Shown here piece by piece: positions 7,818 through 61,472 of a DNA stretch of 64,000 bases. The notes under the pieces are model-generated. The model was not told the DNA's origin. It saw only the letters and a program-made list of their open reading frames with translations, and did not search any database. The number at the start of each line of letters is the position of its first letter. The first letter of the stretch is position 1. The stretch is from contig CDMY01000859.1 in the NCBI GenBank assembly GCA_001179505.1, positions 1 through 64,000 on the forward strand, written 5' to 3'. Source of the DNA: Vitrella brassicaformis CCMP3155 (lineage: Eukaryota > Protista > Chromerida). A program made the position numbers and the translations under genes.

Positions 7818-9153
7818 TGGATGCCCCGATGCTTCCTTCAAGGAGGGAGGGAGGGAGGGAGGGAGGCAGAGGTCCTGTCTTTGGCTCTTTTTCTGTGTTT
7901 ATTGCGGGTTCGGGAGATCAGAGGAGTGTTTGTCAGTCAGGGAAAGGGATCATGATGCGCGTCAGTTTGTACAGTCCAGATTACAGCACGGCGCAGTGTG
8001 GTGACTGTGTGACGCATTTATGTGTATGTGCGTGAATCCCTCTTTGTCTGCCGCGTGTGATGTGGACACACTGTCCAGCTCGGGAAAGCCTACTGTTCGC
8101 CTCAGCGTGCCGTCACAGCATAAGCATAGCCACACACACACATGGAAGGAGGCATCCATCCATCCATCCATCGACTGTCGTCACGACACCCATCAGACAG
8201 ACACACCCACATGTGTTCATCCTCACCTCACCCACAGCACACACAAACGGCAACGGCACGGACACACAAAGACTTAACCAGGGACGTATACAGCAACATC
8301 ACATAAGTGGAGAGGACAGTTTAGCCAGACAGACAGGCAGACAGGCAGACAGACAGACAGACAAGGCGGCCCCGTAAGGGATAAATAGGACAATGTGAGA
8401 CACATTTAGATAGTGTACACACGCACGCGAACCACGACACCGTCAGGTACAAGTAGGCACAGTCACACTCAACACAGGTACCGTACGTGAAATGTATGCA
8501 GCTAGCTACCCTACCGTCCACTTCTTGCGGGAATACACGTACAAATAGGTGCTCCCCATGCATAGCATACCCCGTACCACTCCACCGTCTCAGAGAAAAG
8601 ATGACTGACACGCATAGCACACCATCCAATATCTATATATAGACCAGAGACCACTCAGTTGAAGAACAGACCCACTTGCCGTCTCTATCTGCCCATCTGT
8701 CCATCCATGAATCCATCCATGAATCCATCCATGTGTGTAAAATACAAAACGCAAACGAATTGGGAGTGATGTCGTCAGTCAGTCAGTCAACAATTAAGGC
8801 CAAAAGAAATCATGGTCAAGCACCTCAGGCAGACAGCAACAATGCAATCAATGAATGCATTCACGGCAGCATCAGCATCAGCATCGCCTGCCTTTCGTTC
8901 CCTCAGCTACCTAAATGGTGCCCCTCCCTCCCGCCCCTCTAACATGGACGCGTGCATGTGCGGCGTGCGTGCGCGTCGATCTCACCATGGGCCTGGACGG
9001 CACGGACACGGTGAGCAATGATGCATTGACGCCATGGATGGATGTGTAGGTGGGTGGGTGTAAGAGAGATGCATTGGACAAATATAGAATCAATCAAGGA
9101 AGAGAGAGAGAGGGGGGGGAGGGAGGGAGGGAGGGAGGGAGGGGGGAAACCGG

Positions 9154-10959
9154 CTACAGGGGAGGGGAGGGGGTCTTCTTGTAGTAGCAGGCAATGATGC
9201 CACTGAACACACACCAACCACACACACGGAAGGGACCGGTATGCATGTCTATGTCTTCGTTGTGTCTGTGTCTCTTGGCCTACTGTGGCGCATCTTGGTC
9301 GTAGCAACAGCCGCGGTCCTCACACTGAATCAAGGACCCAGCACAAAGACAGGGACAAGGAGAGATCACTCCACACACGTGCCGTCACGCCAGTCAGTGT
9401 CTCACTCAGCGCTCACGCACCACTTGTGGGTCGATGCCCATCCATCCGCAGTCGGCTCTCTGCTCCCACCCGACGCCACAGACCTCTTCGCCCCCATTCT
9501 CCTGCTCCTGGCTCGGCTCAGGTGGCGCACCCCCTGTCCCGCTTGATGGGTTGTCGCCCCCATACACCTGCTCTGCCTGCGCTGAGTCCTCCACGTAGTC
9601 GCCGTCGACAACCAGGTGGTCCGTCTGCTCCTCACCTGTCGCTGAGGGCCCGTTGGTGGCCTCTTCTGCAGCAGTGGAGCCGCCGTCCTCAGAGGGCAGC
9701 CCGGTGGCCTGCTCGTAATCGTAGTCGTATTCATACTCGTACTCGGACTTCTTGGCACCACCCGCACCCTACAGAAATGGGCGGCATGGTCTCTCGGCAT
9801 ATTGTGTGTGTGTGTGAGGCGGGGTGGGGTGGGGTACATACCATGTTCTTTCTTGGGTACTGGCCTTTTCCCTTGCCACGTGCTTGGTGACCCTGCTGCT
9901 GCTGCTGCCTCTGCCTGCTGCCCGCCGGCCGTCTGTTGGATGTGGTCTGTGGCTGCCCCTGATTGCCGTTGCCGTGCCTCATCTGCTGCTGCTGCTGGTG
10001 AACACCCTGGTTGCCCGCTCCCTGCGGCGGCGGCGGCGGCGGCTGTTGTTCGTTCCATGCCTCTGTTGTTCCTTCGCTGGACGATTGGGGGTTGTTGATG
10101 TGTGGCTGTGGGTTGGGGATGAGGCCGCCGCCGGCATTGGAGAACTCAGCATCGGGCGGATTGATGACTGGCCTGGGTACGGGTGTGTGGGCGTTGTCCT
10201 GGTACAGCTGCTCCTCCTGGTTGATCTTGTGTGAGTTCTCGAGCTCGTTCCAGATGCCGTCGTGGTCGTAGTTGGGCCGCAGGTTGTGCTGCTCGCCGCA
10301 CCACTTGGGCCCGAAAGTGCTGCAGCAGAAGGGCTCGTTGCCGGTGTTGTTGACCCGCCTGGCGTCCTTGCCATTGAGCCAGCAGTTCTGCTCCTCCATG
10401 ATGGGCTTGTGCACCCAGTAGAGACAGCCCTCGGTCTCCTGGCAGATCTGCTGACACCGCCGGGCTGACGGCACGTAGTCGCGGGCAGGGTTGGTGCTCA
10501 GCTCGCCCCCAAGCATGTCCATCCCGTATGTGTAACACTTGTTAGCTGCGGAGGAGACCAACACACGGACACAGAGAGAGAGGGAGGGAACAAGTGTGTC
10601 CTTCCCTGTGTGTGTTGCCCTCTGCTGTGCGTCCGTCACGTTCTCTGCTCACTCTTGTCGTGTTTGTCATCAGGTATGGTGGGCACGACTGTGGCGTTGC
10701 GGTAGTGGACGTTGAGGGCGAGGTAGTGTCCGCCGACCACCTGGATGCGCTCGGGGATGAACTCGACGAGGTTGATGAGGTCGGAGCCCTCGTTGGGCCC
10801 GTAGATGTTCCACGAGAAGCCGCGGAAGTCGTCGAACCACTGGGGCTCGAACTTGCGGGACTCCTCGTCCCATGCCGAGAACTTGATGAAGTCCACGTAG
10901 GTGGTGATGGGCAGAAGATGCTCCTCCTTGTAGATACCCGCCCAGTACTGGGCCCACCT

Positions 10960-10992
<33 letters not shown>

Positions 10993-12033
10993 CGAAGTGC
11001 GGAGTGGTGAGCGCAAGGTGGGTGGAGAGGGAGGGGTAGTACCATTCTCTGGGGTCGATGATCCATGCGTTGAAGTAGAGCCTCATGGGTTCCGTCATGA
11101 GGTTAACCTGTGGATTGCAGCCCTTGTTCTCATCCTCCTCATTCACACCAGGCGGACACGCATTGTCCTGCACACGCACACATACAAATGCAGCGAGGTG
11201 ACAACCCTCCTCCCATGTCCAGGTTGCTTTCTCGTCTCCCGGACTCGACTCACCCAGCGGATGACCTTGCCGTCATAGAACCACGCTATGTGTCCAGGTG
11301 TCCACTCGAGAGTGTACGTGTGCCACCTCTTCTTGACCTCCCAGGTCTGCGCCTCGTGGTTGGCGGCCACCCCAGGGGCGGCGTAGAACTCCTCCTTGAT
11401 CTTGCGGCCGCTCTCCCAGCCCCACCCCGTAATGATGTTGGTCTGTATGGGGGTGTCCTTGAACCAGCCCTTGCCGTGCACTTCGAAATCCACCTCCTGC
11501 CAGCTGTTCGTTCCGGCCTTGTTGGTCTGGTTGACGTACAGAAAGAAGGCCGGCACCAAGCCGTCCATGTCGAAATTGGTCAGCCACCGGATCTCGAAGC
11601 GGCCGTAGTGGAAGAACTCGTGAGTGACCATACTCGCCCCCGTGATGTATCGGTGCCGACAGACCTTCGGGTTGGGGTCCCACGCACACGTGCCGTCAGG
11701 CCTCCAGCCCCCGGGATACACGCCGTCAGGAGGCGTTTCCGTTTCCAGAGCGACGGTGCCCTCCCCTTCTCTCGCTCCCTGCGGCTTCACTTGCCCACCT
11801 TTGTTGTGGCCACCTTGATTGCCTCCAGCTGCGTGTTGTTGTGGCTGCTGACCGTGCTTGCCCGGCACTTGAAGGCCGCTCGCTACAGGGGCGCTCTTGT
11901 GGATGCCGAGAGTGTCATAGTCGACAAGTGGCATCAGGTCTGGGTCGACGGGCGTCCTTCCCCAGCCATTTGCGAAGGGCGCCATGGCGGCAGACAGGGG
12001 CAGCGCCGCGGCGAGGGCGAGAAAGCGCTTCAT
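9154..12033 (-). CDS. Secreted modular glycoside hydrolase: signal peptide, circularly permuted GH16 (lichenase-type ExDxE), PAN/apple, Q/P-rich linker, trefoil (P-type) domain
   Basis: MKRFLALAAALPLSAA signal. GH16 motifs YGRFEIR, WQEVDFEV (11482-11496), WHTYTLEWTP..IAWFYDG, EPMRLYFNAW. PAN CYTYGMDMLG...CQQICQETEGC..W...CWL...GPKWC. Trefoil CGVGWEQRADCGWMGIDPQV|CEDRGCCYDQDAPH|GIIACYYKK. Introns were checked for phase. Confidence 0.9.
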
Positions 12034-12312: not shown

Positions 12313-13243
12313 ATGGTGACCCTCGTGAAGACGTGTGCCCTCCTCCTCATTGCGGCCTCCGTCGCCCTTGCGTCACACTCAGAGCTCGCCCGCCCCTGCG
12401 CCGCTGGAAACATCCAGGGCTGCCCACAGGAAGATGTCGCGCCGCCCGACGCTGCGAGAATGGCCGTTCAGCAGCCGACTGTTGGGGAGGGTGGTGAGAC
12501 ACCGCTCCAGCGGCAGCTGACCGCCCCTGAGACAGGCGACGCCAGCGCGTCGGCCGCCGAGGTGCCTGAGAAGGTGGAGTTGCGACAGCTGACGGACGCC
12601 GAGGCGGCGGCCGTTGTGGAGGGTCTCCGGAAGCTGGACCCTCGTCAGGCGCAGCACATCATCCGGTCGGGGTTCCTTGCGCGGACCTGCCCGTTGAACG
12701 GTGGCCCATCCTGCCCTGTGGCCTACTTCTCCGCCGAGGCTGGCATCCGCCGGATGCCCACCAACCAGAACGGCGTCACCCTACAGGGCCCCGAGGAGGC
12801 CTTCATCCAGTAGTAAGCAACCCACCACACCGCAACACACACACAACGCATCCCATGTACGTCTGCTGGTGGTGGGGTGTGTGTGTGTGTGTGCGTGCAG
12901 CCGTGACTGGGTTAACGACGGTGGTCAGTATCAGATCAAGGTGCCCAACATGAGCGGAAACGAGAACAGACCCGTCAGGGCGTCGCCCGAGAACGCCGCA
13001 GCGGCCGGCAGGGCCATCGGCATGGCGGCCATGAAGGCCAAGGGCAACCCCTTTGTCAGGACCCAGCCCGCCCAGGAGCAGCCGCCGGCCGCTGGCGCTG
13101 GCGGCGTTGGCGGCTCCTCGTCCTCGCCCGAGACGAGGCTGAACCCGCAGAAGAAGGCCTACTTGCCGGGTGAGATCCGAGGCACGAGCCGCAGCACCCG
13201 CCCCAACACCCTGAGGCGGTTGAGGGAGGAGAGGGACCAGTGA
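12313..13243 (+). CDS. Hypothetical secreted protein; 2 exons
   Basis: Signal-like MVTLVKTCALLLIAASVALA. Exon 1 ends CAG TA|gtaagc and exon 2 starts gcag|C CGT GAC TGG, in frame with ORF 12701-13243. Two Cys pairs (C-x7-C, C-x6-C). Confidence 0.75.
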
Positions 13244-19980: not shown

Positions 19981-22900
19981 TCATCTCAGCAAAATGCCGG
20001 CAAAGTGCGTGCCGACCTTCTCCACCGGCTCTGCAAGGGCGTTCTTGAGGTAGCAGCATGTGCCGGTGCCGGTTCCTTCGCAATTTCTGATGTACTGGTA
20101 GGCCAGGCAGTCGTCCGTCTCGACGCACTTGTTGGCACACTGGCCCTCCTGCAGGTTGCGAAAGGGGTCGCCCTCGTTGATGTTGTTGCCCTCGCCGTAA
20201 TCCATGTTGGGCTTGACCGCAAAGCAGTGATCCACATCGCCGAGGACCACCTTCCGACCAGAGAAGACCTGACATGACCACACACAGAGAGAGGCGGAAA
20301 CCCCCATCTGTGTTGGACTGCTTGTGTGTGGCTGGTATGCTCTCCCTCACCATTTCTGCGCCCCTTTCGACCGCCTTGAGTGACTTGAGGTAGCAGCAGT
20401 TGGCCTGGTTGCCGGTGCACTGAGGCAGGAAGGTGTACCCCCCACACATGGTGTCAGCGAGACACGCCTCGGCGCACTCGCCCTCGCTGTAGTCGGGAAA
20501 GGGCTCCTTAACGAGGTCTTCGCCGAACGGCAGGTCGTTCAACGGCAGAAACTGGAAGCACTCCACATTCTCTGGTCAATCAATCAGATGGAGACATCGC
20601 CGTGTGTGGGGGTCGATCGTGTCTATGTGGCTGTGGCGTACGTGAGCATCCGATGTCGAGCTCGAGGAGGCCGGATGAGCCGCCCAACCCACCCGCGACA
20701 ATGTAATAGGTACCCGCACCGAGGGTCCTCTTGATAGCTGGCCGACACACACACACACACGCTCGCACCCCAATGCACAGCGATGCGATGCCTGCCGTCT
20801 CTTTGGCTTTCTGCGTGTCGCTCACAGGCGCACTCGTAGTTCCCACATGCGGCGGGCGAGATCGCGGCACCTTGGCTCTCGTCACTTGTGGCAATGCACG
20901 ACGACGCCCCGTCCCCCGAACAATCGCTCACCAGGGCGACCATGGCGTTTGGGACGGAGGTCTGTTCTCGCGGCACCGTCAGTGCGGCGGCGACTGTCTG
21001 TTTGGAGGGGATGGTGGATGGGGGTATTCTGAACTTGAATATGCGGGTGTGGGTGCTGGCGTTGAAGGACCCGCAGTTGCTTAGGAAACCTGTGCCGGCA
21101 TCTGCAGCCGAAGACACACGGATGGCACATGCTATGCATTCAGAATGAGGGCGCGGCGATCTCGCTTTGCCTGTTTCTGAGGGTATGTGGGTCAGGATGG
21201 TATCGCCACAGCCGTACTCCTTCTCCTCGACCACCCCATCCGCAACCAGCGATGCATCACACTCTGCATTGCAACCAACCACACACAAAGCCAATGAATG
21301 CGCGCCATGCCAAAGGTCTCCCACAGCCCGTCGGCGCTCACCAGCGAAAGTGCTGTTGGGTGCCTGCGGTAGCATTTCGCCGTTCATGAGGGCAAATGTC
21401 GCCGTAAAGGCTCCTTCCAGGTGCTCGACACCATCGTAGGTGAGGGGGATGGCCGTCACGGACACCTGACGCTCCTGCTCTTCCATCAGGCTGGCGACAT
21501 CCTCGTCAAAGCACGACAGCACCTTCTTGCCACTGCCACCGCCACACAGAAAAAAGGGCTCCATAGCTGAACGAAAACACACCACAGCAAAAGGCAGACA
21601 GGTGTGTGTGTGGATTTGCGTGTCTGTGTGTGTGATCCCCGGTCCGCTCACTGTCTAGTCTGGTGGTCCATCTGGTATGATCGCCAAGGGTCATCCGGAG
21701 GTCCTGTGTGGCGAACCGGACGGCCTTCGTGGATGCCGTCGTCTCGGCCCGCACGTTGAACAGCGGAAACCGTGGCAGGTTGAGATTCACGACATCGTTC
21801 TGCATGTACGTGTGGCGCAGCAGAGACTCCGACTCAGAGGGAAGGTGCGTGTCGCTGGTCACGGTGATTGACAGCACTTTCGGCTCCGCGTCTAACACAC
21901 ACACAAACATACAGATATTCTCTCCTTTCCTCTCGGCGTAAGTGTAATCAATCGCCTGGCTTACGTGGGTCGAGGTTCTTGATTCGGACGGGAATACAAG
22001 GAGGGGGCCGTCGCACTCCGTTCTCGAAACACAGGTTGTTCGCCTTGAGGATCGCATCATCACAGCACTCTTCGGACCCTCCCGCCAGCATGTCGCATCC
22101 GGTCTTTCCGCATGACCCACACGTCGTTGGGCAACACACCGTCCGCTCAGCGTTGAGAAGCCCGGGGGCCGCCTCGCACGACGAGTAGGTGGGCGAATAG
22201 TCTGCAGACACAATAATGAAAATTGTTGGGGAGCTGTGGCTGCAGAAGGGTGAGGTACAGAAACACCCATACTGTCTGCTATGCAGGGTGCTTCGCCCTC
22301 ATGGCAGGAGCGGCCCGCTTCGGCTATCTTCTCGGGACAGCAGCCATCCTCTTCTTCCGCCCGGGTGCCGCAGCTGGACGCGTCGCACTTGCTGCACCCC
22401 GGGGCACAACATGCGAACCTGCGGCCCACCACAAGATGTCACATTGTCACGTGCGCACCGATGGATGTGGTGCTCTTCCACTGACCAGGTGGGGTCCAAT
22501 GTGCCCCCCAGCTCATTGCAAACAGTCGTTGAGAAGAGCAGGTGATTCTCACCGTTCCCATCAGCCGCTATTGGATAGCGCTGCACCTGCTGCACCTCTG
22601 CCCGCAGAGCCGCCCTTGCAGCCTTCCCTTCATCACACAGCGGCAGTGTGCCCTTCTGACGCCACTGCTCAGCGACGGCTGGAGAGGCGCTCTGCAGCAG
22701 CTTTTCGGGCAGCTCCTCGGCTCCACCTTCTCGGCACAGTCGGCAGCAGGAAAGGCCGAGGGCGCCGCAGCCATGCGGCCGTTGACTGCCTTCTGAGTCC
22801 CGGCAGTCGGGGTCGTACAACAATTCGTGCTTCTCGCAGGTGGCTCGCCGGCATACCTCGGCACCTGATCAAACAAAGGGGTGAAGAAGAAAGAGGGGTC

Positions 22901-58064: not shown

Positions 58065-61000
58065 ATGGCGATGGATCCCCGGTTTGATCCGTCCAGCAAC
58101 CCGCGCTTCAAGAAGGCGCCGCTCAAGACCAGGAAGACCCTCATCGATGAAAGATTCCAGAGGTACAGAGCGCCACAAACACGCACCAATCCATCAGTCC
58201 ATCAGTCCATCCATCGCCCATTGATCCCGCCTGTGTCTGTGTGGCTGTCAGGATGTTCGATGACAAGGCCTTCCAGACGCACACGGTGGTTGATCCCTAC
58301 GGCAGACGCAACAGGGACGTCAAGGCCGACGACATGCGGCGCTTCTACCGAATGGAACAAGACGATGAAGAACCGACAAAGGACGAGCAACACGATGCCC
58401 CTGTCAAGCGCAAGAAGGAGAAGGCTCTCAAGCGCAAGCATCAGGAGCAAGATGCCGATGACAAGATCGATGACAAGATGGCAGATGATGATGATCCTCA
58501 GGCGAACGGCAGCCGGGGCACCGTTCCCTTCGAGTGGAGTGAGGAATCCTCCTCAGATGTGAGAAGAGCAGACAGCAGTGTGCCGCCCATGTGAAAAGGC
58601 ACTCCCTGTGTGTGGTTTCTTGCGTACGACAGGAGGAAGAGGAGGACGAGGCGATCGGTAAGGATGACTCCGTGTGGAACCGGCTCGACCAAGACGTCCC
58701 CACGGTGCGCAGACAGTATTCACCAGACAGAGGCGGACCATGGCTGCATTCTTGCGCACGGGTGTGTGTTCAGGGTGACGTGACTTGTCGCGTGGCGGTG
58801 ATGGGATGCGATTGGGATGTCCTCACGGCAACCGACATCCTCGTGCTGGCACAGTCGTTCCTGCATGACTCCACGCCTGCCGGAGGCACCGACGCCAAGA
58901 AAGGCAGGACTACACAGACCGTCATCAGCGCTGGCCCAGGTCAGAGAGTGATACAAGGGGGGATGGGCCACAGAGTTGCTTCATTCACACATCCTGTCCT
59001 TCCGGCTGTTGGTTCCTGCAGTCCGCGGCATCCGGCGTGTAGCCATCTATCCATCTGACTTCGGCCTCGAGCAGATGGCCAAGGAGGCGGTGGAGGGTCC
59101 TGACATCGACCTGCCCAAGACAGCAACAGCCGCCCCCACAACTGAGACCTCACCACATGGCGAAAACACAACGGCGGAAGCGATTGATGGCCCTGGGGAG
59201 GTCGTGGACGGTGATGAAGAGCAGGGCGGAGAGGAGGAGGGAGAAGGAGAGGGGGAAGGTGACGAGTCTGCTGAGGTTGGTGACACTGAAGACGACGAAT
59301 CGACACAGGCGGCACTGAGGAAATACCAGAGACAGCGCAGCAAGTTAGTGAGCAACAAAAATCAGTCACCTGGTCATCTACTGTGGTTTGTGTGCCTGTG
59401 TTGCATCAGGTATTACTACGGGGTGATAGAGTGTGAGAGCGAGGACATCGCCGCCAAACTCTACGAAGAGCTGGACGGGCTTGATGTGGTAAGGACAGAC
59501 CTGCAATGCCAGCAGGCTGCTGCGGGAAACGCCTCGCTTTCTCTCCGTCGTGTGTGTCTCCTCTGCAGACGTTTGCTGTGGACGGGCTCGACCTCCGGTT
59601 CATTCCCGACTCCCTGGCCTTCCCCCATGCACCATCATCAGATGCGGCCGTCATCCCTCCCGGCTACAGAGCGCCCAACGCATACACATCGGCCTTGCGA
59701 CACTCCAAGGTCCGGCTCACCTGGGACGAGACCCCCGCCACACGCACCAAAGACCTCAGACGCAAGTGAGCACCCACAGCAGCACGAGAGGGGGAGAGCA
59801 GGCAGCTGGAAAATCGCATTCGTATGGTGTGTCCAGGTTCACTGATGAGGAGCTGAAGGACCACGACCTGCAGGCCTACCTCGCGTCGTCGTCAGATGAG
59901 TCGGATGAGGGGGAGGACGTGTGGCCGCATCAGTCCATCTACGATGAGAGCAAGGGTGGCGAGGGTGGCGATGACAAGAGGTTCGATCACATCGATGAGG
60001 ACAACCTGGAGGAGTACCGGCAGCTGCTTCTGGGCGACGTGGAGAATGAGGACGAGGAAGAGGACGATGGCGAGGGTGAGGGTGAGGGCGTCACGAGGAA
60101 GGCAAAGAAGGCCAACAGCAAAAGCAAGAAGAACAAAAAGGTACAGAGAGGGTGGGAGGCCACGGAGGTGAGGGCCAATCATGGTACGCATGCGTGTGAT
60201 TCTACAGGGCGGTGACGTGATAGAGATCACCTTCAAGCCTGACCTGGAGGCCCTCGCCATGAACGTCAAGGAGCGAGCCAAAGACAAAAAGAACATCACA
60301 GTCGACCATCAAGGGTGAGCAGCGCACAGCAACTCCCACGCCACCAATGGTGCATGACACGACAATGGCGTGGGGGTGTGTGCAGTCGTGAGGTGCTAGA
60401 GAAGGAGTCCAAGAGCCCCTGGCAGGCCTATCTGGAGAAGCGCAAGCAGAAGCGCAAGGAGAAGAAACAGGAGAGACGACAACAGATAGAGCGACAGAAG
60501 AAACTGGTACCCAAGACGCGTCAGAAAGCGACCATTGGCTGGCTGACAGGGTGTTCTTGTTCAGGCCCGTGGGGAGCCTGTCGACGAGGACGAAGGAGAG
60601 GGAAGCGACGACATCATCGGAGGCAAACCGACGAAGCCAAAAGCGCCCAGAGTACGCAAGAATGGTGCGTGCTCACCTTGGTGGACCTCCCTGTCTGCGT
60701 GTGGTGTGTGTGGTGCAGTTTCCCACTGTTGGAGCTCTGGACGAGACGGACGTGCCAGACTTCGAGACCGCTGAGGCAAATCCTAAAGACGACGAATACG
60801 ACGAGGAGGTGCGAAGGATCTTAACCCAAAAAGAGCGACGGGGTCCCCCTCACACTCTCCGTGGGCTTGTCATGCAATGCAGGAGGGTCGTCACTTCAAT
60901 TTGCGTGGCCGCATCAGCCGCCTGCGCGACAAAGGAGGCGTCGAGGCCTCGACCAAGGCGCAGAAGAAGGCCAAGAAGAAGACGGCCGAGTCAGAAATCC

Positions 61001-61472
61001 AACTGCAGACGGACTTCAAGGTAAGTCAGACGCAGGAAACGCGCACGCATTCACAGGTGCTCGATCTGTGTTGGTCGTCTGAATGCATGCAGATGGATCT
61101 GTTGGACCCCCGCATCGCTCGCGTGTTTGAGAATCCTGACTTCGCCATCGATCCGACAAACCCGAGATTCAGAGTAAGGCAGCACCCAACGCATAGAGCT
61201 ACCGTCATACCCCTCTCTCCTCATCTATCTATCGTCTCTTGTGTACACAGAACACGGAAGTCGATCGCCAGCTGCTGGCGCTGCGAAGAGTGCGCAAGAG
61301 GAAGATGGCCAGCAAGGCACAGCAAGAGAAGGGTCTGCCAACAACCAAGCCCCCGCCGCCCCGCAAGGCCCAGAAGAGACCACGTGCAGCTGATGACAAG
61401 CCCCCTGCTGCTGGCGTGGAGGAAGAAGGCTTCGTGCTCGTCAAGAAGCGAAAGAAGAGCAGGCAGGGTTAG
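58065..61472 (+). CDS. ESF1: Pre-rRNA-processing protein ESF1 (NUC153-containing); many exons
   Basis: DPRF...RFKK, IDERFQ|MF, VDPYGR, TCRVAVMGCDWD, IRRVAIYPSDFGLEQMAKEAVEGP, LRKYQ..R.|YYYGVIEC, DGLDLRFIPD, ALRHSKVRLTWDET, DLQAYLASSSDE, EITFKPDL, DPRIARVFENPDFAIDPTNPRF. Confidence 0.94.

What the first reader, a model, noticed from the sequence alone, without database searches (positions are those of the whole stretch)
9154..12033. Unusual GH16 + PAN/apple + trefoil architecture: a candidate secreted glycan-binding, wall-degrading 'enzyme-adhesin'
Seen in sequence: one phase-consistent spliced ORF joins a signal peptide, GH16, a six-Cys PAN/apple module, a Q/P/G-rich spacer and a complete trefoil (C..R.DCGW.GI...CE.RGCCY...CYY). 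The trefoil is split by two introns and is invisible in the ORF track. Established: PAN/apple domains mediate adhesion in apicomplexan microneme proteins such as MIC4 and AMA1, and trefoil domains bind glycans/mucins and occur in GH31 enzymes. I do not recall this three-domain combination being described. Inference: it could anchor a glucanase to a wall or mucus surface, for example in sporangium opening or in contact with a host or alga.
Basis: partly seen in the sequence, partly recalled or inferred. Interest (0 to 1): 0.8.

Follow-up and report, generated by a model that had tools for sequence, protein, structure and literature searches.

The report
Secreted glucanase carrying PAN and trefoil
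An expressed seven-exon gene of the alga Vitrella brassicaformis, a free-living relative of malaria parasites, joins a bacterial-style beta-glucan-cutting enzyme to two small sugar-binding-type modules (PAN/apple and trefoil); the three-part combination appears unique but is built from known parts.

Summary
A minus-strand gene (12033-9154, 7 exons, 6 GT-AG introns, 783 aa) is covered by one 2347-nt spliced transcript contig. Its length and joints equal the model, and a second study repeats three joints. A database protein (P0001, Vitrella brassicaformis, uncharacterised) is identical to the model.

The domains are:
- a signal-peptide-like N-terminus;
- a complete GH16 of the circularly permuted Fibrobacter lichenase type, with the catalytic E-x-D-x-E intact;
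- one PAN/apple module, borderline in Pfam, whose fold is closest to the galactose lectin SML-2 of Sarcocystis;
- a long disordered spacer;
- a full trefoil (38.9 bits) cut by two introns.

The best reading is a secreted beta-glucanase steered by two lectin-type modules, probably onto the alga's own wall. That function is inferred, not shown.

The triple architecture is a singleton. It is the only trefoil carrier among the 150 nearest GH16 representatives and is absent from 20 paralog loci. It is still not exotic here: the genome holds at least 20 GH16 loci, over 100 PAN and at least 18 trefoil matches, and five other loci with PAN directly downstream of a GH16. This scan had already noted GH16+PAN genes elsewhere in this genome. 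I rate it a new variant of a known kind, of moderate interest.

The parts
11254..12033 (-). Exon 1 (residues 1-260): start codon, signal-peptide-like N-terminus, disordered G/P/Q-rich stretch (26-128), first half of GH16
   Evidence: The spliced contig covers 11253-12026. Pfam GH16 scores 52.8 bits.
11980..12033 (-). Signal-peptide-like segment (residues 1-18: basic MKR, hydrophobic core, small residues A-M-A)
   Evidence: The maximum Kyte-Doolittle mean over 10 residues is 2.36, at residue 4. There is no other TM-like window and no hydrophobic C-terminus. No dedicated predictor was available.
10653..11649 (-). GH16 catalytic domain (residues about 129-403), spread over exons 1-3 with introns 1 and 2 inside
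   Evidence: Pfam. The best PDB sequence match is Fibrobacter succinogenes 1,3-1,4-beta-glucanase, E 6.5e-14. The AF2 model of residues 105-405 has pLDDT 90.1. Foldseek gives 3axe/1mve with TM 0.88-0.92 by target, rmsd 2.2 A, E 1e-23.
11482..11496 (-). Catalytic motif E180-V-D182-F-E184
   Evidence: Motif scan. W178, E180 and D182 are invariant and E184 is 97% conserved in the 60-sequence alignment.
11043..11167 (-). Exon 2 (residues 261-302): loop with C264 and C277, and further jelly-roll strands
   Evidence: pLDDT is high across this part.
10653..10957 (-). Exon 3 (residues 302-404): last part of the GH16 jelly roll
   Evidence: It has no Pfam or PDB sequence match on its own, but it is part of the confident model that superposes on Fibrobacter lichenase.
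9842..10545 (-). Exon 4 (residues 404-638): PAN/apple module plus Q/P/N/G-rich spacer
10289..10537 (-). PAN/apple module (residues about 407-489; Cys 407, 434, 438, 444, 458, 486 plus an extra pair at 477/478)
   Evidence: PAN_4 scores 26.7, 24.9 and 29.6 bits against a cut-off of 27. The cysteine columns are invariant in the alignment with 19 PAN modules of the same genome. The AF2 model has pLDDT 82.6. Foldseek top matches are SML-2 2yio (TM 0.69, rmsd 2.0 A), then FXI/prekallikrein apple domains, EtMIC5 and TgMIC4.
9481..10288 (-). Disordered spacer (residues about 490-734): a Q/P/N/G-rich part (pI 8.3), then an acidic Tyr/Glu/Asp-rich part (pI 4.1); intron 4 lies inside
   Evidence: Composition and pI. 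No Pfam domain.
9421..9768 (-). Exon 5 (residues 639-754): acidic spacer and the first third of the trefoil
9178..9480 (-). Trefoil (P-type) domain, residues 735-776, on exons 5, 6 and 7 with introns 5 (9325-9420) and 6 (9203-9283) inside
   Evidence: Pfam Trefoil scores 38.9 bits over profile positions 1-43 of 43 on P0001. Taken exon by exon, the three pieces map in order to positions 1-19, 21-32 and 35-41 of a profile built from nine trefoils of the same genome. Both joints are in the RNA contig.
9284..9324 (-). Exon 6 (41 nt): trefoil core C-x4-C-C
   Evidence: It scores 18.8 bits alone, above all 500 shuffles.
9154..9202 (-). Exon 7: last trefoil cysteine, short tail and stop codon (9156-9154)

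Best explanation
This is an intact, expressed nuclear gene of Vitrella brassicaformis for a secreted, soluble, modular beta-glucanase.

Shown here:
- One spliced mRNA encodes 783 residues.
- Residues about 129-403 form a complete GH16 jelly roll of the circularly permuted Fibrobacter lichenase type, with the nucleophile / helper / acid-base triad E180, D182, E184 in place.
- Residues about 407-489 fold as a PAN/apple module.
- Residues 735-776 are a full trefoil.
- About 245 disordered residues separate the PAN from the trefoil.
- There is an N-terminal signal-like peptide and no membrane anchor.

Inferred: after secretion the GH16 cleaves (or transfers) beta-1,3-1,4- or related beta-glucan chains by the retaining double-displacement mechanism of its family. 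The PAN and trefoil modules take the place that CBM6, CBM35, malectin or dockerin modules occupy in the bacterial relatives. They would bind glycans and hold the enzyme on a polysaccharide or glycoprotein surface, and the long flexible spacer would let one anchored molecule sweep an area. The most likely surface is the alga's own laminated cell or sporangium wall, for remodelling or release of daughter cells.

Also inferred: the enzyme core is of bacterial descent and expanded in Vitrella, and this copy picked up PAN and trefoil by domain shuffling independently of the other GH16+PAN genes.
For: Gene and transcript. The X4 contig of 2347 nt equals the spliced model from 9152 to 12026, and X5 from a second study repeats three joints. 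P0001 is identical to the model and is named Vitrella brassicaformis CCMP3155.

GH16 type and integrity. The TM-score by target is 0.88-0.92 to the naturally permuted Fibrobacter enzyme, against about 0.55 to Bacillus lichenases. Conserved positions are kept.

PAN. Trefoil. Secretion features.

PAN and trefoil stand where CBMs stand. Among the 110 nearest GH16 representatives, 17 carry a T9SS sorting tail, 11 CBM6, 10 CBM35_2 and 3 dockerin. Only Vitrella proteins carry PAN. The nearest PDB fold to the PAN is a galactose-binding lectin.

Wall role: there are at least 20 GH16 loci, and the paralogs examined also start with signal-like peptides. Chromerids form walled sporangia with vesicle traffic to the wall (Woo 2015).

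Independent fusion: the window gene is sister to eight Vitrella paralogs with no PAN downstream on the same strand within the fetched flanks (clade support 99/99). PAN-bearing paralogs fall outside that clade. The window's PAN is closest to PANs of non-GH16 loci.

Bacterial affinity: the named nearest non-Vitrella relatives are Chitinispirillales (Fibrobacterota) and Oscillospiraceae, and the Atlas neighbours are Fibrobacterota.
Against: No activity, binding, localisation or stage-specific expression was tested, and the wall polysaccharides of Vitrella are not known to me. PAN_4 is under Pfam's cut-off in two of three scorings. The protein has S134 where 98% of relatives have Glu (Fibrobacter E11), and three other conserved aromatic positions differ, so the substrate may not be classical lichenan. 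The trefoil has I-I-A-C where the paralogs that keep the classical motif have V-P-W-C, so its sugar-binding cleft may be altered. The signal peptide was judged by simple rules only. Contigs cannot give expression levels or rule out shorter isoforms. Bacterial origin rests on unlabelled representatives and a midpoint-rooted tree with many open forks.
Confidence: 0.6

Rival explanations
1. Outward-facing enzyme-adhesin. PAN and trefoil would bind foreign glycans such as coral mucus, other algae or bacterial exopolysaccharide. The protein would then attach the alga to a host or substrate surface, or digest external beta-glucans for food, rather than act on its own wall.
For: The nearest PDB fold to the PAN is an apicomplexan microneme galactose lectin. 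From my own knowledge, trefoil factors in animals bind mucin glycans. Woo 2015 links chromerid sugar-binding secreted proteins to a presumed association with corals. The protein is soluble, with no anchor.
Against: There is no evidence of host contact for this protein. The RNA contigs show it is transcribed in two studies, but the conditions of those runs are not on record. A family of at least 20 GH16 loci in a walled, sporangium-forming alga fits endogenous wall work as well or better.
Confidence: 0.2
2. Wall-building transglycosylase. The GH16 core would mainly transfer glucan segments onto other wall polymers, as plant XTH and fungal Crh enzymes do, with PAN and trefoil selecting the acceptor polymer.
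For: The motif is the bulge-free E-x-D-x-E form shared by lichenases, XTH and Crh. Crh5 and XTH/EG16 structures appear among the fold matches. Substitutions occur at otherwise conserved cleft positions (S134, W331, Y354, D361).
Against: The closest structures by a wide margin are hydrolytic Fibrobacter lichenases (E 1e-23, against 1e-8 for Crh and XTH). Nothing specific to transglycosylases was identified.
Confidence: 0.15
3. Artefact or non-enzyme: either a fused gene model of neighbouring genes, or a catalytically dead GH16 acting only as a lectin.
For: Pfam covers only profile positions 29-135 of 175 of GH16, and exon 3 alone has no sequence match.
Against: One spliced contig spans all seven exons, with an uninterrupted frame. 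The full jelly roll is modelled at pLDDT 90 and superposes on an active enzyme over 271 columns. The catalytic triad and nearly all conserved positions are present.
Confidence: 0.03

Closest known systems
Fibrobacter succinogenes 1,3-1,4-beta-D-glucanase (PDB 1mve, 1zm1, 3axd/3axe), the natural circularly permuted GH16 lichenase
   Same: Same fold and same permuted strand order, with the catalytic segment first. Identity is 28% over 271 aligned columns, rmsd 2.2 A and TM 0.88-0.92 by target. The W-x-E-x-D-x-E catalytic segment is the same.
   Different: This is a eukaryotic gene with six spliceosomal introns. It has a 100-residue disordered N-terminal extension and an extra disulfide loop in exon 2. 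Ser replaces Fibrobacter E11. PAN and trefoil modules follow the catalytic domain; the nearest bacterial relatives instead carry CBM, dockerin or T9SS modules.
Apicomplexan PAN/apple lectins: Sarcocystis muris SML-2 (2yio/2yil), Toxoplasma MIC4 apple domains (4a5v, 2ll3), Eimeria EtMIC5 (1hky)
   Same: Same small alpha/beta apple fold with the same cysteine framework. SML-2 is the best structural match in the PDB (TM 0.69, rmsd 2.0 A). Vitrella is a sister lineage of the apicomplexans.
   Different: Sequence identity is only 12-22%. This is a single module attached to an enzyme, not tandem arrays in a microneme adhesin. An extra vicinal Cys pair is present (477/478). Conservation of the galactose-binding residues was not assessed.
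Trefoil (P-type) domains of animal TFF peptides and of GH31 alpha-glucosidases
   Same: Full-length Pfam Trefoil match with the six-cysteine spacing. As in GH31 enzymes, a trefoil sits on a glycoside hydrolase (the GH31 point is from my own knowledge).
   Different: The trefoil is C-terminal and linked by a long disordered spacer to a GH16, not N-terminal on a GH31. I-I-A-C replaces the V-P-W-C seen in the paralogs that keep the classical motif. It is cut by two introns, whereas the other trefoils of this genome were found uninterrupted in six-frame translation.
Other GH16+PAN proteins of Vitrella (P0103 = CEM00815.1, P0021; loci C347, C270, C295; earlier scan notes s1-218449 and s1-221696)
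   Same: Same genome, same permuted GH16 family, and PAN modules downstream of the enzyme.
   Different: They lie in other branches of the GH16 tree and carry one to many PAN modules. By the earlier notes they have membrane anchors. None has a trefoil motif within 5 kb. The window protein is soluble and adds a trefoil.
Eukaryotic GH16 enzymes with cysteine-rich binding modules (GH16+WSC and GH16+CBM1 clusters of the ESM Atlas); Phytophthora CBEL (CBM1 + PAN/apple wall protein, from my own knowledge)
   Same: The same design logic: a wall-active or glucan-binding part combined with small disulfide-rich modules. GH16+WSC is the nearest cluster by language-model features (score 0.80, a lead only).
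   Different: The binding modules and GH16 subfamilies differ, and no sequence relationship was shown. CBEL has no catalytic domain.

Membership tests
Glycoside hydrolase family 16 (Pfam PF00722) | Profile match above the curated cut-off (22 bits) | tested here: met
   52.8 bits on exon 1, 54.1 bits on P0001 and 56 bits in six-frame search.
Glycoside hydrolase family 16 (Pfam PF00722) | Catalytic E-x-D-x(x)-E motif with nucleophile and acid/base glutamates | tested here: met
   E180-V-D182-F-E184. These columns are invariant or 97% conserved among 59 relatives.
Glycoside hydrolase family 16 (Pfam PF00722) | Complete beta-jelly-roll fold | tested here: met
   The AF2 model of residues 105-405 has pLDDT 90.1 and pTM 0.88. 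212 PDB matches have E <= 0.001, and all those listed are GH16.
Circularly permuted (Fibrobacter-type) lichenase subgroup of GH16 | The catalytic-motif segment precedes the segment that is N-terminal in Bacillus lichenases | tested here: met
   Query 130-259 aligns to residues 7-120 of the Fibrobacter enzyme but to 66-167 of Bacillus enzymes. TM by target is 0.88-0.92 for Fibrobacter, 0.76-0.79 for engineered permutants and about 0.55 for native Bacillus enzymes.
Circularly permuted (Fibrobacter-type) lichenase subgroup of GH16 | Hydrolysis of beta-1,4 bonds next to 3-O-substituted glucose in mixed-linkage glucan | not testable with these tools
   This needs an enzyme assay. Ser at the position of Fibrobacter E11 and three other changes leave the specificity open.
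PAN/apple domain (Pfam PF14295 PAN_4, PF00024 PAN_1) | Profile match above the curated cut-off (27 bits for PAN_4, 21.4 bits for PAN_1) | tested here: inconclusive
   PAN_4 scores 26.7 bits, 24.9 bits and 29.6 bits in six-frame search. PAN_1 scores 17 bits.
PAN/apple domain (Pfam PF14295 PAN_4, PF00024 PAN_1) | Conserved cysteine framework (core C-x3-C-x5-C ... C, plus outer first and last Cys) | tested here: met
   C434, C438, C444, C458 and C486 fall in invariant columns of a 20-sequence alignment with PAN modules of the same genome. Of the nine of those modules or their frames that I scanned, eight pass Pfam's PAN cut-off. C407 aligns with the outer Cys of 10 of them.
PAN/apple domain (Pfam PF14295 PAN_4, PF00024 PAN_1) | Apple fold (a helix packed on a curved antiparallel sheet) | tested here: met
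   The AF2 model has pLDDT 82.6. Nearly all of the top 25 Foldseek PDB matches are PAN/apple modules: SML-2, FXI, prekallikrein, EtMIC5, plasminogen N-terminal domain and TgMIC4.
Trefoil / P-type domain (Pfam PF00088) | Profile match above the curated cut-off (21 bits) over the whole domain | tested here: met
   38.9 bits, E 7.8e-10, profile positions 1-43 of 43 at residues 735-776 of P0001.
Trefoil / P-type domain (Pfam PF00088) | Six cysteines with trefoil spacing, including the adjacent CC pair | tested here: met
   Cys 735, 745, 755, 760, 761 and 773. The three exon pieces align in order to a profile of nine trefoils of the same genome.
Trefoil / P-type domain (Pfam PF00088) | Glycan (lectin) binding through the cleft that holds the conserved Pro-Trp | not testable with these tools
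   The motif reads I-I-A-C instead of V-P-W-C. Binding must be measured.
Classical secreted protein | Cleavable N-terminal signal peptide, no membrane anchor | tested here: inconclusive
   There are basic n-, hydrophobic h- and small-residue c-regions, no TM-like window and no hydrophobic C-terminus. No dedicated predictor or experiment was available.

The most novel reading that the evidence does not exclude
In the free-living sister lineage of the apicomplexans, PAN/apple and trefoil modules would serve as true carbohydrate-binding modules that target bacterial-derived wall glucanases. The original job of the microneme-type apple lectin fold would then have been enzyme targeting on the cell's own glycan wall, later re-used for host-cell adhesion. 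This protein, with both modules on one soluble enzyme, would be the simplest system in which to show it.
Probability: 0.25. Interest if true: 0.6.

Novelty: new variant of a known kind. Interest (0 to 1): 0.4.

Why it matters
If PAN and trefoil here bind glycans and steer a glucanase, two module types known mainly from animal and parasite adhesion or mucosal proteins would join the list of carbohydrate-binding modules of CAZymes. It would also give a concrete example of how the ancestor of the apicomplexans used apple-type lectin modules before parasitism, a point that Woo et al. 2015 made only in general terms. It further documents a bacterial-type, circularly permuted lichenase that became a multi-intron, domain-shuffled gene family in a eukaryote. 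The protein is small, soluble and modular, so each part can be expressed and tested.

Tried and rejected
- **Separate genes or a fused model.** Rejected by the spliced contig and by identity with P0001.
- **Bacterial contamination.** Woo 2015 reports heavy contamination of the reads. Rejected because the gene has six GT-AG introns that are removed in RNA.
- **Dead enzyme.** Rejected.
- **Trefoils on paralogous GH16 genes, including intron-split ones.** A motif scan of 20 loci, about 5 kb either side, found none. This is regex level only, so a very divergent trefoil could be missed.
- **Trefoil or PAN on non-Vitrella relatives.** PAN was found only in Vitrella proteins among the 110 nearest representatives. 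No second trefoil appeared, by Pfam in those 110 and by cysteine pattern in 150.
- **Exon 3 alone against PDB and Pfam.** Nothing found.
- **phmmer with the window PAN against the 150 representatives.** It matched only itself.
- **An enzyme domain upstream of the second PAN-trefoil cassette at C414.** None found within about 4 kb.
- **Literature.** No paper holds Vitrella together with the P-type trefoil, or GH16 together with 'PAN domain'. A search for Vitrella wall glucans gave nothing usable.
- **Plastid targeting through a bipartite leader.** Considered and thought unlikely: there are acidic residues just after the signal peptide and disulfide-rich extracellular-type modules. This was not tested with a predictor.
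- **Joined model.** No exon model joined by me was sent to any search tool. Exons were searched one by one by reference. Full-length scans used the stored database protein P0001. Exons were concatenated only inside a local script, to check phase and identity with P0001.
Full report
**Where and what**

The finding's coordinates, 9154-12033, are exactly the stop and start of a gene on the minus strand. Reading the three minus-strand frames and the splice sites gives seven exons:
- E1 12033-11254
- E2 11167-11043
- E3 10957-10653
- E4 10545-9842
- E5 9768-9421
- E6 9324-9284
- E7 9202-9154

The six introns are 73-107 nt long and all are GT..AG. The coding sequence is 2352 nt, in phase throughout, with one terminal stop, and encodes 783 residues. 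The ATG at 12033 is the first start codon of its open frame.

**Transcript evidence**

No run is on record as RNA. Laying contigs of four runs nevertheless shows that two of them are RNA-derived.

Run X4 holds one 2347-nt contig laid as seven pieces: 9152-9202, 9284-9324, 9421-9767, 9841-10545, 10653-10952, 11041-11166 and 11253-12026. Five joints are listed with CT..AC ends on the plus strand, which is GT..AG on the gene's strand. The sixth joint (intron 2) is not listed. There, three contig letters are unplaced and two letters fit both sides. The sum of the pieces (2347) equals the spliced model from 9152 to 12026, which settles it.

Run X5, from a different study, has a 1396-nt contig with the E3/E4 and E4/E5 joints. 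Run X2 is collinear with the genome, introns included, so it is DNA.

Contigs cannot exclude minor shorter isoforms or give expression levels.

**Organism**

The window's genome has 72,700,666 bases in 1064 contigs. That is the exact figure given for Vitrella brassicaformis CCMP3155 by Woo et al. 2015 (PMC4501334). The database copy of the protein is named for that organism. The six spliced introns rule out the bacterial contamination that the paper reports for the raw reads.

**How the spliced model was searched**

The trefoil pieces were scored apart against a local profile. No model joined by me was sent to any search tool.

The exhaustive representative search with the GH16 core of exon 1 returned a stored protein, P0001, of 783 aa. 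A local comparison showed it identical to the seven-exon translation. That script was the only place where the exons were concatenated. All full-length scans used P0001.

**Domains**

1. N-terminus. It reads MKR, then a ten-residue hydrophobic core (Kyte-Doolittle mean 2.36), then small residues A-M-A. There is no other membrane-like segment and no hydrophobic C-terminus. This points to a secreted, soluble protein. It was judged by simple rules only.

2. Residues 26-128. This stretch is rich in G, P and Q and modelled at low confidence.

3. GH16.
   - Pfam gives 52.8-56 bits against a cut-off of 22.
   - The best solved relatives by sequence are the Fibrobacter succinogenes 1,3-1,4-beta-glucanase entries (E 6.5e-14). 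Residues 130-259 align to residues 7-120 of that enzyme, but to 66-167 of Bacillus lichenases.
   - An AlphaFold2 model of residues 105-405, built with a 60-sequence alignment, has pLDDT 90.1 and pTM 0.88.
   - The model superposes on the 'natural circularly-permutated jellyroll' of Fibrobacter over 271 columns (rmsd 2.2 A, TM 0.88-0.92 by target, E about 1e-23). Engineered permutants give 0.76-0.79 and native Bacillus enzymes about 0.55.
   - Exons 2 and 3 have no sequence match alone. The model shows them to be the second half of the permuted fold.
   - W178, E180 and D182 are invariant and E184 is 97% conserved among the relatives. Almost all other conserved positions are kept. The exceptions are S134 (Glu in 98% of relatives; E11 of the Fibrobacter enzyme), W331, Y354 and D361.

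4. PAN/apple.
   - Pfam is borderline: PAN_4 scores 26.7, 24.9 and 29.6 bits in three scorings against a cut-off of 27, and PAN_1 scores 17 bits.
   - A profile search collected PAN modules of the same genome. In a 20-sequence alignment with them, C434, C438, C444, C458 and C486 fall in invariant columns and C407 aligns with the outer cysteine.
   - The AlphaFold2 model (pLDDT 82.6) finds almost only apple domains in the PDB. The best is the galactose-binding microneme lectin SML-2 of Sarcocystis muris (TM 0.69, rmsd 2.0 A). Next come factor XI and prekallikrein apple domains, Eimeria EtMIC5 and Toxoplasma MIC4.
   - I accept the module as PAN/apple.

5. Spacer. It has a Q/P/N/G-rich part (pI 8.3) and an acidic part rich in Tyr, Glu and Asp (pI 4.1), together about 245 residues without any domain match.

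6. Trefoil.
   - On P0001, Pfam Trefoil scores 38.9 bits (cut-off 21) over the whole profile, positions 1-43 of 43, at residues 735-776.
   - Taken exon by exon, the three pieces map in order to positions 1-19, 21-32 and 35-41 of a profile built from nine trefoils of the same genome. The middle piece alone beats all 500 shuffles.
   - Introns 5 and 6 cut the domain. This is why the six-frame Trefoil scan of the genome missed it.
   - The last loop reads I-I-A-C where the paralogs that keep the classical motif have V-P-W-C.

**Context in the genome**

This genome is rich in all three parts:
- at least 20 GH16 loci, eleven of them 42-49% identical to this core;
- at least 118 PAN_4 and 144 PAN_1 matches, both lists capped;
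- at least 18 trefoil matches.

PAN modules lie directly downstream of a GH16, on the same strand, at five other loci: C491, C299, C347, C270 and C295. Pfam on their open frames confirms this. The annotated proteins P0021 and P0103 (CEM00815.1) show GH16+PAN within one protein. A PAN followed by a trefoil occurs once more, at C414, with no recognisable enzyme upstream.

Two earlier notes of this scan describe membrane-anchored GH16+PAN genes elsewhere in this genome (s1-218449 and s1-221696). GH16+PAN had therefore been found before on other DNA of this genome.

The new element here is the trefoil, together with the soluble, anchorless form. None of the 20 paralog loci shows a trefoil motif within about 5 kb.

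A maximum-likelihood tree of GH16 cores places the window gene as sister to eight Vitrella paralogs that show no PAN downstream on the same strand within the fetched flanks (clade support 99/99). The PAN-bearing paralogs lie outside this clade. The window's PAN is closest to PANs of non-GH16 loci. An independent fusion is therefore the simpler history. One loss on the sister stem is not excluded.

**Wider databases**

Among 1.84 billion representatives, only 299 match the core at E <= 0.001 and 18 at E <= 1e-10. The top matches are Vitrella paralogs. The next are bacterial or metagenomic, and the named ones are Chitinispirillales (Fibrobacterota) and Oscillospiraceae.

Of the 110 nearest representatives, 17 carry a type IX secretion sorting tail, 11 carry CBM6, 10 carry CBM35_2 and 3 carry dockerin. 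PAN occurs in three, all from Vitrella. No second trefoil turned up, by Pfam in those 110 and by a cysteine-pattern scan of all 150 listed.

The whole-length word search returns only P0001 itself. It is a cluster of one, listed as an 'unnamed protein product' / 'GH16 domain-containing protein', with PF00088, PF00722 and PF14295 precomputed. No Atlas cluster of 50 or more members shows the combination. The nearest clusters by features are GH16+WSC and Fibrobacterota GH16, as leads only.

Woo et al. list TREFOIL and PAN-APPLE among chromerid extracellular domains, but no GH16 fusion. No held paper combines GH16 with 'PAN domain'. The architecture is therefore not common, which defeats the second refuter. 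Equally, it is not unseen: it sits unannotated in public databases.

I could not run an architecture query over all GH16 subfamilies.

**Mechanism**

Shown: an expressed gene for a signal-peptide-bearing protein with an intact permuted lichenase-type GH16, one apple module, a long disordered tether and one trefoil.

Inferred: a retaining endo-beta-glucanase, or possibly a transglycosylase, that is held on a glycan surface by two lectin-type modules. These occupy the place of the CBMs in the bacterial relatives. The tether would give reach.

The target I think most likely is the alga's own cell or sporangium wall. The reasons are the size of the secreted GH16 family and the walled, sporangial life cycle. 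An external target, such as coral mucus or other organisms, is the main rival.

The Ser at the E11 position and the altered trefoil loop warn that neither substrate nor ligand can be read off from relatives.

**Verdict**

I class it as a new variant of a known kind, a modular GH16 whose binding modules are PAN and trefoil instead of CBMs, in a lineage where these modules are shuffled freely. Interest is moderate.

Noticed in passing
window 20044-20524 (-): Two further PAN_4 matches (29.5 and 26.9 bits) about 8 kb from the finding, on the same strand. This is another PAN-domain gene in the window.
   Followed up: no
L001:1402-2242 (-) = G000:C414 about 60330-61170: A second PAN-then-trefoil cassette in the genome (PAN_4 38.1 bits, Trefoil 52.4 bits, in different frames). 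No enzyme domain was found within about 4 kb upstream.
   Followed up: partly
window 9203-9283 and 9325-9420: The trefoil here is cut by two short introns. The 18 other trefoil matches of the genome were found uninterrupted in six-frame translation. This suggests intron gain in this copy, or a different source copy.
   Followed up: no
window 9730-9762 (-), start of exon 5: An alternating acidic and tyrosine run (E-Y-E-Y-E-Y-D-Y-D-Y-E) at the start of the acidic half of the spacer. Its function is unknown.
   Followed up: no
window 11632-11634 (-), residue S134: Ser where 98% of 59 relatives, including four of six Vitrella paralogs (the fifth shown has Gly), have Glu (E11 of the Fibrobacter enzyme). 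This is a possible change of subsite specificity.
   Followed up: partly
window 12313-12813 (+): A divergently oriented neighbour gene, 280 bp from the start codon, also begins with a signal-like hydrophobic N-terminus. It is covered by separate RNA contigs in X4 and X5.
   Followed up: no
window 9033-9151: A G-rich GGGA-type low-complexity stretch lies directly after the stop codon. The transcript contig breaks there, so the 3' UTR is not defined.
   Followed up: no
L036 / L011 = G000:C275 511516-521043 (+): A close GH16 paralog lies about 8.5 kb upstream of two PAN modules that are among the nearest relatives of the window's PAN. Whether they form one gene or two was not resolved.
   Followed up: no
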